A stretch of 63,922 bases of DNA, counting the filler, from Octopus bimaculoides (lineage: Eukaryota), in assembly GCF_001194135.2 (NCBI RefSeq). It is 9 parts of 8 records of this genome, joined end to end, with 100 filler letters (N's around TTAATTAATTAA, not from the genome) between each part and the next. Parts side by side here need not be neighbours in the genome. Positions count along the whole stretch, not along the records: positions 57,898 to 61,385 come from NC_069004.1; 8 more parts are not named here. The stretch is one strand, 5' to 3'. The notes beneath the pieces are model-generated. The model did not search any database. It was not told where the DNA came from and was given only the letters and a program-made list of their open reading frames with translations. Both the position numbers and the translations under genes were made by a program. Numbering within the stretch: the first letter of the stretch is position 1; each line of letters begins with the position of its first letter. Positions 58,559 through 60,165 of the stretch are shown piece after piece.

Positions 58559-59404
58559 CTGTAAGGCACAAGATATACAAATGATGTTACTGAGAATGGG
58601 AAGAAGTGGTAGGACTATCAGAAAGGCAAATATAGCACATCACCTCATTCTATGTTCAAATTTCATCTTTTGAGGATTGAAATAGAACCCTCAAAACAGA
58701 ACCAGTAATACACAAGGGAACACTAGTGGAAGACTGAGTTGATAAGAGATATCTGCCAAGTAACTGAAGGGGGTTAAGGTTTTATAAGCAGTTCAACTAC
58801 AGGTGTTATCTTGTATCCTTGTTCAAGACTCAAAATAGCTTGGTACATCTGGCCGCAAGAAGGTACCACAAGGCAGAATTTTTGTATGCATCATCTTGTA
58901 ATGCACCAGAACACATCATCAATGATGTTTCCTGGAGTTGTTGGGAGTTTTGAGTCTTTCAACAATCAGACACCCTCACCCAAGTGACGCAGCCACCGTT
59001 GGTCAAGTCCCAGGTGATATATAGTTAATACTACCCATGGTAGCACACCTCCTGATCCACAGCCACTCTGAGACAACCTCTGCTGCCTCCATAGTCAAGT
59101 TAATGGCCCCTGTGATGCTTGGCATGTTATAGACTCGGCATGAGAACCGACCTGCAAACCCTCTGCATCCCACCTCAATAATCCATCTTTCATGACACTC
59201 ATTGTTTTGGTGTAACTCCACCAGCTCAGCATATATTTCACTCATTTCCTTTCTTCTATCTCCAAAATCCAGTCCTTCCAAGGAATGGAGGGCGAGTTCT
59301 AACAGAACCACCTGTTTGGATAATACAGTTATATATTTAAGAGATGAGGAATTATTTACATTATTTACATTTGACGGATATTTGTCCTCATCTTGTTTGT
59401 TGTT

Positions 59405-59450
59405 AACACAACGTTTCAGCTGATATACCCTCCAGCCTTCGTCAGGTGTC
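59405..59450 (-). ncRNA. Minimal type I hammerhead motif (inverted arm)
   Basis: GACAC-CTGACGA-A-GGCTG-loop-CAGCT-GAAA-CG-TT-GTGTT on the minus strand. Confidence 0.75.
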
Positions 59451-59577
59451 TAGTAGCTACTAACCCCAAGATTCCGAGTTCGATTCACGGCAGCGACCTG
59501 ATTAATAATAGTAATAATAATAATATAATAATAGTAACATCGTTAGGAATGAGAACCCAGGTTCGAAATTTCCCCAA

Positions 59578-59623
59578 GACACCTGACGAAGGCTGGAGGG
59601 TATATCAGCCGAAACGTTGTGTT
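59578..59623 (+). ncRNA. Minimal type I hammerhead motif, canonical core
   Basis: GACAC-CTGACGA-A-GGCTG-gagggtatat-CAGCC-GAAA-CG-TT-GTGTT. Predicted cleavage after GUU (3' of 59618). Confidence 0.8.
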
Positions 59624-60165
59624 AACAACAAACAAGATGAGGACAAATATCCGTCAAATGTAAATAATGTAAATAATGCACCTGTTTGGATGTTTTTAAG
59701 ATCAGCTCAGTAAGCAGAAGAAGCACTGTGGAATTGGTGAGTGCTTCCATAGTTTGTAGTACCAAGTTCAATACTTGCCAATGACTGACCTCTATAGTTC
59801 TTTGTTGAATAATACCGTTTCTATCCAAGAAGAGTTGCTTTAACAAAATGTGAAATTTGAATGACCTAAGCCAGTTAATAAAAAAAAAAAAAATGCTCAT
59901 TTTTGCATAACTTTCAGTAAAGCCCTTGGAAAGAGATCTTTCAAATCATACCTACCATCTTGAGAAAAAAAAGGATTCATTTGAGAATACAGACCCAGAT
60001 ACATTATATCTGGATGTTATATCTGCTGGAGTTGGGTAGACATAAGGTCATACAATAACTGGAAAACTTCTGCGTGGTTGTGTGACCAGCAAGAAATAGC
60101 AGCCAAATCTCCCTTAAATTATATGCTACCACCCTCATAAAAAAGACTCTATATATGATATACTC

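What the first reader, a model, noticed from the sequence alone, without database searches (positions are those of the whole stretch)
59309..59691. Clean insertion of a palindromic tRNA-hammerhead element with both 3' ends facing outward
Seen: a 13-bp TSD whose removal restores the HERO frame KTSKQVVLLEL, and 101-bp inverted arms (1 mismatch), each containing a hammerhead. The left arm has an extra 29-nt tail (59322-59350). The centre holds a Pol III B box and the junction tagtag|ctacta, which is a remnant of an inverted tRNA head fused to a forward head. Established: LINE twin priming does not duplicate the 3' end, whereas Penelope insertions often have an inverted pLTR and a variable ~30-nt tail. 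Inference: the mobile unit is a full head-to-head palindrome (pLTR<-tRNA|tRNA->pLTR) that lost its hairpin tip. It would be a SINE-like parasite of Penelope that can make self-dimerising ribozyme RNA from both strands. A tRNA-SINE with a hammerhead is known (Schistosoma Sm-alpha); I do not recall this palindromic form being described.
Basis: partly seen in the sequence, partly recalled or inferred. Interest (0 to 1): 0.9.

Follow-up and report, generated by a model that had tools for sequence, protein, structure and literature searches.

The report
Truncated octopus hammerhead SINE, inverted arm
This is one real insertion of a short octopus retroelement that carries a tRNA-like head and a Penelope-type hammerhead ribozyme; its mirror-image arms are a known by-product of Penelope-style insertion and are not a new palindromic kind of mobile element.

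Summary
There is a perfect 13-bp target duplication and 101-nt inverted arms with one mismatch. Each arm carries a Penelope-type minimal hammerhead, and only the left arm has a 29-nt extension. Removing the insert restores a conserved LINE endonuclease motif.

Eight further independent copies, from Octopus sinensis (one also seen at the same site in O. vulgaris) and from Logan run assemblies, show a one-directional SINE-like unit of about 320 nt. Its order is tRNA-like head (A and B boxes), (AAY)n, linker, minimal hammerhead, 3' region. Copies end at one of two alternative 3' ends about 29 nt apart.

The window copy is a sense copy truncated inside the head, so its A box is lost. It is joined head-to-head to a second, shorter inverted copy. 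That inverted copy ends at the distal 3' end and so carries family sequence that the sense copy lacks. The centre is not palindromic. Most other copies have no inverted part.

Inverted copies, an optional tail of about 30 bp, palindromic junctions and short duplications are published Penelope hallmarks, and a Penelope protein extends both target strands in vitro. The palindrome is therefore most likely an insertion by-product.

No autonomous partner was found. The tRNA origin rests on box matches only.

The parts
59309..59321 (.). Left copy of the 13-bp target-site duplication CACCTGTTTGGAT
   Evidence: family D13, 100% identical. The sequence belongs to the LINE reading frame (SKQV).
59322..59350 (-). 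29-nt tail, which is the stretch between the proximal and distal 3' ends of the family. In element sense it reads TCCTCATCTCTTAAATATATAACTGTATT.
   Evidence: It is contiguous with the arm in independent copies L042 10130-10158, L043 and L047. It is absent from six other copies, which end at ...AAATAAT.
59351..59451 (-). Inverted copy of the 3' module, truncated at its 5' side just upstream of hammerhead helix I
   Evidence: It is identical to the right arm except at 59418.
59405..59450 (-). Minimal hammerhead of the inverted copy, weakened by a G10.1.U11.1 pair (CpG decay at 59418)
59342..59393 (-). Predicted 9-bp stem AGAUGAGGA (59385-59393) with UCCUCAUCU (59342-50). It closes the region that holds the proximal 3' end and can form only in copies that have the tail.
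   Evidence: minimum-free-energy and centroid structures. The stem is conserved in the O. sinensis copy but not in L047, so support is weak.
59451..59462 (.). 12-nt palindrome TAGTAG|CTACTA at the head-to-head junction. 59452-59455/6 are junction nucleotides complementary to the first bases of the sense copy.
   Evidence: GCTACTAA is family head sequence, also seen in L047.
59456..59498 (+). Remnant of the tRNA-like head, running from the anticodon-loop region to the acceptor 3' strand. It includes the B box at 59477-59487. The A box is missing.
   Evidence: Aligned to L042 9864-9908. The A and B boxes sit 43 nt apart in L042. ARAGORN and Rfam do not call a tRNA.
59499..59537 (+). A-rich (TAA/TAG)n internal microsatellite of the unit
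   Evidence: 59503-59537. It is longer and AAC/AAT-rich in L042, L043 and L047.
59538..59577 (+). Conserved linker CATCG..TTAGGAATGAGAACCCAGGTTCGAAATTTCCCCAA. It holds the ATG at 59549 and a second, non-functional-looking GGTTCGA match.
   Evidence: Conserved in all copies that reach this far. It also resembles the part of the 129-nt tandem unit in L046 that precedes the hammerhead.
59578..59623 (+). Intact Penelope-type minimal hammerhead. Helix I is GACAC/GUGUU, the core is CUGACGA, A is bulged, helix II is GGCUGG/(U)CAGCC, then GAAA, helix III is the palindrome ACGU, and U17 follows. Cleavage is predicted after 59618.
   Evidence: (0 of 3000 shuffles). The same motif is intact in L042 and L043 with only the free position N7 changed. 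A compensatory helix II (GGCCG/CGGCC) occurs in L046.
59624..59678 (+). 3' region of the sense copy, ending at the proximal 3' end ...(AATGTAAAT)2AAT(G)
   Evidence: Five other copies end at the same point and then diverge.
59679..59691 (.). Right copy of the target-site duplication
59003..59900 (-). Host sequence: the C-terminal restriction-like endonuclease region of a decayed LINE, interrupted by the insertion
   Evidence: RPD...LLELTVPWE...KRAKY...IEVGCRGF motifs. The clade (HERO) was not tested.

Best explanation
The insert is one retrotransposition event of a non-autonomous, SINE-like octopus family. The family unit is about 320 nt and runs in one direction: a tRNA-like head with Pol III A and B boxes, an (AAY)n stretch, a conserved linker, a Penelope-type minimal hammerhead, and a 3' region. 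The 3' region ends at either of two points about 29 nt apart.

The proposed mechanism is as follows. A Penelope-like element's reverse transcriptase and GIY-YIG endonuclease cut the LINE target with a 13-bp stagger. Both exposed 3'-OH ends then primed reverse transcription on the SINE RNA. One end started at the proximal site and copied back into the head, stopping around the anticodon loop; this is the sense copy, 59456-59678. The other end started at the distal site and stopped just upstream of the hammerhead; this is the inverted copy, 59322-59451. The two cDNA ends were joined head-to-head through a short palindromic junction.

Shown here:
- the anatomy of the insert;
- the empty site;
- the family unit;
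- the two alternative 3' ends;
- the fact that the inverted arm holds 29 nt of family sequence that its neighbour lacks.

Inferred:
- that Penelope machinery did it;
- that the head drives Pol III transcription;
- the order of events.

This copy has lost its A box, so it is probably inert as a source element. Any transcript through it, including the host gene's intron RNA, should fold into a 101-bp hairpin rather than an active ribozyme.
For: - The target duplication and arms are confirmed.
- The empty site restores a conserved LINE motif.
- The hammerhead has every hallmark listed for Penelope minimal hammerheads in PMC4209133: an extra nucleotide between A9 and G10.1, the G10.1-C11.1 pair, a palindromic 15.2-16.2 with no loop 3, and a helix I of 5 bp. 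It gave 0 hits in 3000 shuffles.
- Independent copies define a one-directional unit with two 3' ends. Six copies end at ...AAATAAT and three continue with the tail. Translated copies show the same split.
- The arms differ by one CpG transition, whereas family copies differ by 12-29%. Both arms were therefore made from one template at one time.
- The inverted arm carries the tail that the sense copy lacks, so it cannot have been copied from its neighbour in place.
- Published Penelope hallmarks match: an inverted truncated copy, a 30-40 bp tail on one side, palindromes at the inverted junction and duplications of 8-10 bp (PMC3846280; PMC8557442).
- The purified Poseidon protein cleaves and extends both strands, starts internally at two sites, and the tail is the stretch between those sites (PMC11167929).
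- Active Penelope families are reported in O. vulgaris (PMC13282606).
- The hammerhead module is homologous to a 129-nt tandem, retrozyme-like array with a compensatory helix II change.
Against: - No autonomous Penelope-like element sharing the 3' module was found. No long RT protein begins with the module's open frame among 1.84 billion representatives.
- Only nine independent insertions could be examined, several on short contigs with little upstream sequence.
- The O. sinensis copy A has an inverted piece made of head and microsatellite with no 3' end. Simple priming from both ends does not explain it.
- The head is not recognised as a tRNA by Rfam or ARAGORN.
- Rfam hammerhead models do not hit the motif, and self-cleavage is untested.
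- The (AATGTAAAT)2 near the proximal end could be read as a LINE-type 3' repeat.
Confidence: 0.7

Rival explanations
1. One reading: the mobile unit is itself a full head-to-head palindrome (pLTR<-tRNA|tRNA->pLTR), and this copy lost its hairpin tip.
For: The window copy has 101-nt arms. O. sinensis copy A has an inverted head fragment abutting a forward head, with the palindrome GCCCGCGGGC at the junction.
Against: The centre shows no residual inverted symmetry: its score is within shuffles, 174 of 500 as good or better. The two inverted structures involve different parts of the unit. Six other copies show no inverted part in the visible sequence, and L047 is full length with 300 nt of unrelated upstream sequence. 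The asymmetric tail also does not fit a symmetric unit.
Confidence: 0.05
2. The family is an ordinary LINE-mobilised tRNA-SINE. The hammerhead is a passenger, and the inverted arm arose by a twin-priming-like accident of a LINE.
For: The head has A and B boxes. There is a short tandem (AATGTAAAT)2 near the 3' end. LINEs of many clades are active in octopus.
Against: Twin priming inverts the 5' part and does not duplicate the 3' end. There is no poly(A) or variable-number 3' repeat: the 9-mer is present twice in most copies. Two fixed 3' ends 29 nt apart, a Penelope-type minimal hammerhead and inverted copies are all Penelope signatures.
Confidence: 0.12
3. The structure arose from two separate events: either two independent insertions side by side, or a later inverted duplication by replication template switching.
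For: SINEs make up about 11.6% of the O. vulgaris genome, so adjacent insertions are common.
Against: A single 13-bp duplication flanks the whole structure, and there are no internal duplications. The arms are 100/101 identical while family copies differ by more than 10%. The inverted arm contains 29 nt of family sequence absent from the sense arm, so it was not copied from that arm.
Confidence: 0.06
4. The structure is an assembly artefact, or it is a foldback or MITE-type DNA transposon with terminal inverted repeats.
For: Inverted repeats plus a target duplication superficially resemble a MITE. Penelope inverted structures are known to trouble assemblers.
Against: The repeats are not terminal, because the tail lies outside the left arm only. 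Related copies lack inverted repeats. The flanks rejoin into one reading frame.
Confidence: 0.04

Closest known systems
Structural variants of endonuclease-containing Penelope-like element insertions (Arkhipova et al. 2013, PMC3846280; Craig et al. 2021, PMC8557442)
   Same: A truncated inverted copy joined head-to-head to the sense copy. A 29-nt tail on one side only (31 bp in Adineta vaga Pen2a). A palindrome at the inverted junction. A short target duplication. A hammerhead in the repeated part.
   Different: There is no RT or GIY-YIG reading frame and no direct pLTR pair. The body is a tRNA-like head plus a microsatellite. The duplication is 13 bp, against 8-10 bp in the rotifer examples.
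Penelope-type minimal hammerheads (Cervera and de la Pena 2014, PMC4209133)
   Same: All listed hallmarks are present. That paper also reports paired motifs 100-700 bp apart on opposite strands, and mostly solitary motifs spread through genomes.
   Different: That paper attributes solitary motifs to truncated Penelope elements. Here the motif is a fixed module of a tRNA-headed SINE-like family.
Poseidon (PAc) in vitro insertion mechanism (PMC11167929)
   Same: Both target strands are extended. Reverse transcription starts internally at two sites, and the tail is the stretch between them. The hammerhead lies some tens of nucleotides upstream of the start sites. The ends here lie 60 and 89 nt after the predicted cleavage site and 129 and 159 nt after the ATG at 59549. 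In PAc the start sites are 111-118 nt into the reading frame.
   Different: PAc starts in an AC-rich stem-loop, whereas the region here is AT-rich. No protein partner is known here.
Schistosoma Sm-alpha and Sj-alpha, SINE-like retroposons with a hammerhead (Ferbeyre 1998 and Laha 2000, as cited in PMC8490949)
   Same: They share the overall logic: a short dispersed element with a Pol III-type head and a type I hammerhead.
   Different: According to PMC8490949 the Sm-alpha ribozyme is a type I hammerhead; the fuller helix III attributed to it here is recalled from memory. The octopus motif has no loop 3. Sequence relatedness was not tested.
Metazoan non-LTR retrozymes (PMC7229834; bioRxiv 10.64898/2026.07.22.740005)
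   Same: They are non-autonomous hammerhead elements proposed to depend on Penelope-like elements. A homologous 129-nt unit occurs as a tandem array in contig L046.
   Different: Retrozymes are defined by tandem units that yield circular RNA. The octopus copies are dispersed monomers with a tRNA-like head.

Membership tests
Penelope-type minimal hammerhead ribozyme | Conserved core CUGANGA ... GAAA ... UH | tested here: met
   59583-59589 is CUGACGA, 59612-59615 is GAAA, and U16.1 and U17 are at 59617-59618. The core is also intact in L042 and L043.
Penelope-type minimal hammerhead ribozyme | Extra nucleotide between A9 and G10.1, and a G10.1-C11.1 pair | tested here: met
   The right arm has a bulged A and a G-C pair. 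The left arm has G.U after a CpG transition.
Penelope-type minimal hammerhead ribozyme | Helix III reduced to a palindrome (15.1-16.1) so that two copies can pair | tested here: met
   ACGU with no loop 3.
Penelope-type minimal hammerhead ribozyme | Self-cleavage, as a dimer | not testable with these tools
   This needs in vitro transcription of monomeric and dimeric constructs.
Rfam hammerhead families | Covariance-model match | tested here: not met
   No hit at E up to 10. This is expected for a motif without helix III.
Insertion made by a Penelope-like element | Target duplication, inverted truncated copy, optional tail of about 30 bp on one side, palindrome at the junction | tested here: met
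   compared with PMC3846280 and PMC8557442.
Insertion made by a Penelope-like element | Sequence shared with an autonomous element encoding RT and GIY-YIG | tested here: inconclusive
   No RT or GIY-YIG frame lies in the piece. No long protein starts with the module's frame. Octopus Penelope sequences could not be fetched.
tRNA-derived SINE | Internal Pol III A and B boxes at tRNA spacing | tested here: met
   For the family: L042 has TGGCGTAGTGG at 9843 and AGTTCGATTCC 43 nt downstream. The window copy keeps only the B box, with 2 mismatches.
tRNA-derived SINE | Recognisable tRNA fold or sequence | tested here: not met
   ARAGORN found none. The Rfam tRNA model gave no hit even on 81 nt.
tRNA-derived SINE | LINE-derived or A-rich, variable 3' tail | tested here: not met
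   Copies end at two fixed points with no poly(A).
Metazoan non-LTR retrozyme | Tandem units each carrying a type I hammerhead | tested here: not met
   The window and octopus copies are monomers. A related tandem array exists in L046.
LINE twin priming | Inverted 5' segment without duplication of the 3' end | tested here: not met
   The 3' 101 nt are present twice.
MITE or foldback DNA transposon | Terminal inverted repeats present in all copies | tested here: not met
   The tail lies outside the left arm, and other copies run in one direction.
HERO clade LINE (host sequence) | Phylogenetic placement of the RT or endonuclease within HERO | not tested
   Only a restriction-like endonuclease motif pattern and fish homologues were seen. 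Pfam and PDB gave nothing.

The most novel reading that the evidence does not exclude
The octopus family may be a genuine Pol III-driven tRNA-headed SINE that borrows Penelope-like machinery through a hammerhead-bearing 3' module resembling a pLTR/ORF start. On that reading the window copy is a natural record of one insertion in which both target strands were extended and both alternative reverse-transcription start sites were used. That would corroborate, in vivo, the in vitro PAc result. Such SINEs make up part of the large 'unclassified SINE' fraction of octopus genomes and donate first exons to host genes.
Probability: 0.5. Interest if true: 0.55.

Novelty: new member of a known kind. Interest (0 to 1): 0.4.

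Why it matters
Penelope-like elements are the least understood class of retrotransposons. Their inverted and tandem structures and their tail were explained only recently, and in vitro. This insertion shows the two alternative 3' ends used at the two ends of a single event, with a verifiable empty site, which is a clean natural illustration of that mechanism.

The family also suggests a classification for some octopus SINEs. About 12% of the O. vulgaris genome is SINE, and among recently active SINE families most are unclassified. Part of it may be Penelope-dependent, which would link tRNA-SINEs, minimal hammerheads and retrozyme-like arrays.

It does not establish a new palindromic class of mobile element.

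Tried and rejected
- Rfam scans of the piece, the element and the O. sinensis head found no hammerhead or tRNA family. ARAGORN found nothing.
- A hammerhead-core pattern scan of metagenome and viral contigs returned 41 loci. All carry ordinary bacterial or phage-type hammerheads with a full helix III, and none is related beyond the core.
- Pfam on the rejoined LINE frame and a PDB profile search gave nothing.
- The test of the centre as a decayed palindrome or a direct duplication was negative.
- The B box in the window copy is at chance level when taken alone.
- The O. bimaculoides locus of P0001 could not be fetched because the gene range was too long. P0009 and P0014 are not on record.
- PMC522041 and PMC5785218 are not held.
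- A Pfam scan of reading frames near the L046 array was abandoned after coordinate and stop-codon errors.
- The idea that the inverted piece in O. sinensis copy A is an internally deleted full inverted copy was considered. The alignment supports only head, microsatellite and the start of the linker.
- The 53-codon open frame was searched as a possible Penelope ORF N-terminus. It retrieved only short translated copies.

Full report
**Observation.** The piece 57898-61385 holds a perfect 13-nt direct repeat, CACCTGTTTGGAT, at 59309-59321 and 59679-59691. It also holds inverted arms at 59351-59451 and 59577-59677: 101 nt, 99% complementary, with 125 nt between them. The only mismatch is 59610 C against 59418. 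It is a CpG-to-TpG change.

Removing 59322-59691 gives a 190-codon minus-strand frame reading ...LILKTSKQVVLLELALHSLEGL.... A search with this frame found LINE-like fragments from a fish and from unnamed contigs. In their alignment the junction falls inside the conserved SKQVVLLELTVPWE...KRAKY...IEVGCRGF pattern without a gap. The empty site is therefore confirmed by homologues. The pattern is that of a restriction-like endonuclease. The HERO label was not tested, because Pfam and PDB gave nothing.

**The hammerhead.** Rfam finds no hammerhead. Read by hand, 59578-59623 is:
- GACAC (helix I)
- CUGACGA (core)
- A (bulge)
- GGCUGG-loop-(U)CAGCC (helix II)
- GAA-ACGU-U
- GUGUU (helix I)

This matches each feature that Cervera and de la Pena list for Penelope minimal hammerheads: an extra base after A9, the G10.1-C11.1 pair, a palindromic 15.2-16.2 with no loop 3, and a short helix I (PMC4209133). 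A descriptor encoding these rules hits only this site in the piece and none of 3000 dinucleotide shuffles. Helices I and II also appear in the minimum-free-energy fold. The left copy has G.U at 10.1-11.1 because of the CpG change.

**Finding relatives.** Pattern scans of metagenome and viral contigs gave only unrelated bacterial and phage hammerheads. Translating the element and searching proteins found exonised copies in Octopus bimaculoides (P0001) and O. sinensis (P0009).

The O. sinensis gene locus (L042) and its O. vulgaris counterpart (L043) could be fetched. A full HMMER search with the 53-codon frame of the O. sinensis copy found 169 short translated copies. Five Logan contigs and one ENA contig carrying such copies were fetched.

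**The family unit.** O. sinensis copy A (L042 9836-10158, orthologous to L043) is a contiguous sense unit. Its parts, in order, are:
- a tRNA-like head, with a perfect A box TGGCGTAGTGG at 9843 and AGTTCGATTCC 43 nt downstream;
- an (AAC/AAT)n stretch;
- a linker;
- an intact minimal hammerhead;
- a 3' region;
- the same 29-nt sequence that forms the window's tail.

L047 is another full-length copy with head and tail and with unrelated sequence upstream. The head is not recognised as a tRNA by ARAGORN or Rfam, so tRNA origin rests on the boxes and their spacing.

An alignment of nine 3' ends shows two alternatives. Six stop at ...AAATAAT and then diverge: the window right arm, O. sinensis copy B, L044, L045, L048 and L049. 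Three continue with TCC.CATCTC.TAAAT.TA.AAC...: the window left arm, O. sinensis copy A and L047. Translated copies show the same split.

**Reading the window copy.**
- *Sense copy.* It starts at about 59456 with GCTACTAACCCC, the anticodon-loop region of the head. GCTACTAA is also present in L047. It has therefore lost the A box. It then runs through the B box, microsatellite, linker and hammerhead to the proximal end at 59678.
- *Inverted copy.* It runs from the distal end at 59322 to just upstream of helix I at 59451.
- *Junction.* About 5 nt (AGTAG) complement the first bases of the sense copy, which produces the 12-nt palindrome.
- *Centre.* It has no inverted or direct internal symmetry beyond that palindrome.
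- *Independence of the arms.* The inverted copy carries 29 nt of family sequence that the adjacent sense copy lacks, so it was not copied from its neighbour.
- *Timing.* The arms are 100/101 identical while family copies differ by 12-29%, so both were made from the same template in the same event.

**Mechanism.** Published work describes, for Penelope-like elements, a truncated inverted copy next to the sense copy, an optional 30-40 bp tail at one end, palindromes at the inverted junction and duplications of 8-10 bp (PMC3846280; PMC8557442). The purified Poseidon protein cleaves and extends both target strands and starts reverse transcription internally at two sites, and the tail is the sequence between those sites (PMC11167929). 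Paired minimal hammerheads 100-700 bp apart on opposite strands were already noted in Schistosoma.

The window copy fits this picture: staggered cuts 13 bp apart, both ends primed on SINE RNA, one at each start site, and the two truncated cDNAs joined head-to-head. Active Penelope families are reported in O. vulgaris (PMC13282606).

Internal initiation would also suit a Pol III transcript that reads past the element. That is an inference.

**What is not supported.**
- The palindrome is not the mobile unit. Six of nine insertions show no inverted part in the visible sequence, and the one other inverted structure involves a different segment. That structure, in O. sinensis copy A, is head plus microsatellite with a GCCCGCGGGC palindrome at the junction.
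- A transcript through the window copy folds into a 101-bp duplex of -197 kcal/mol (z-score -23). That would bury the ribozyme. A minimal hammerhead needs two sense copies to pair.
- The second GGTTCGA match at 59560 is conserved linker sequence, not a B box.

**Weak points.**
- No autonomous partner was found, and no long RT protein begins with the module's frame.
- The sample of copies is small.
- The inverted piece in O. sinensis copy A is unexplained.
- Ribozyme activity and Pol III transcription are untested.

**Comparison and novelty.**
- The arrangement is a known Penelope insertion variant.
- The ribozyme is a member of the known minimal class.
- A SINE-like element with a hammerhead is known from Schistosoma (cited in PMC8490949).
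- Vertebrate retrozymes have been proposed to be Penelope derivatives.
- A homologous 129-nt tandem array with a compensatory helix II change exists in contig L046.
- I found no paper linking octopus SINEs with hammerheads or Penelope elements.

The family is therefore best rated a new member of a known kind. Interest is moderate, about 0.4.

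Noticed in passing
L042 10001-10117 (O. sinensis); also P0001 (O. bimaculoides): A copy of this SINE supplies the annotated ATG, 37 codons and a GTAAGT splice donor to all three isoforms of LOC115224785, a cysteine-rich membrane protein. 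The likely true start, MKAPASIV..., follows in exon 2. Another copy supplies the first exon of dystrobrevin beta isoform X1. This hints that the element provides transcription starts.
   Followed up: partly
L042 9768-9836 with 9861-9929: O. sinensis copy A has a 69-nt inverted copy (86%) of the head's 3' half plus the start of the microsatellite. It abuts the full-length unit at a GCCCGCGGGC palindrome and has no inverted hammerhead or 3' end. Priming from both ends does not explain it; snap-back copying at the 5' end is one possibility.
   Followed up: partly
L046 10030-10379 and about 9900-10010: A contig from an ENA metagenome assembly, from an unidentified eukaryote, carries 2.7 tandem units of 129 nt. 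Each unit holds a homologous minimal hammerhead whose helix II is GGCCG/CGGCC. The array lies next to a tRNA-like head on the opposite strand.
   Followed up: partly
window 59549-59678 plus tail (59322-59350, minus strand): One frame is open for 53 codons, from an ATG 29 nt upstream of the hammerhead through to the end of the tail. Many translated copies keep it (MRTQVRNFPKTPDEGWRVYQPKRCVNN...), although the sampling favours open frames. The geometry recalls the Penelope ORF start that lies inside the repeated 3' region.
   Followed up: partly
window 60480-60850 (minus strand) and 58490-58560 (minus strand): An exon-like frame encodes TPR repeats closest to Pins/GPSM2, with a weaker match to Tonsoku. 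If these are exons of one minus-strand gene, the element lies in an intron. The pre-mRNA would then contain the 101-bp hairpin, a plausible substrate for ADAR or Dicer.
   Followed up: partly
window 58039-58177 and 60278-60381: Two copies (80-84% identical) of another SINE-like repeat lie in direct orientation on either side of the finding.
   Followed up: no
window 61140-61385 (+ strand): An open frame runs off the piece's edge. It encodes a retrotransposon-like C-terminal segment with a PHD/C1-type zinc finger.
   Followed up: no
window 59679-59691 against L042 10159-10170: The target next to the distal end reads AT(CCA)AACAGG in the window and ATAACAGG in O. sinensis copy A. This could be chance or a target preference.
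   Followed up: no
L001-L041: The hammerhead-core pattern retrieved many near-identical full hammerheads in metagenome and viral contigs, for example CTGACGAGGGCTGGGAGGGCTCCCAGCCGAAAC. They are unrelated to the octopus element.
   Followed up: no
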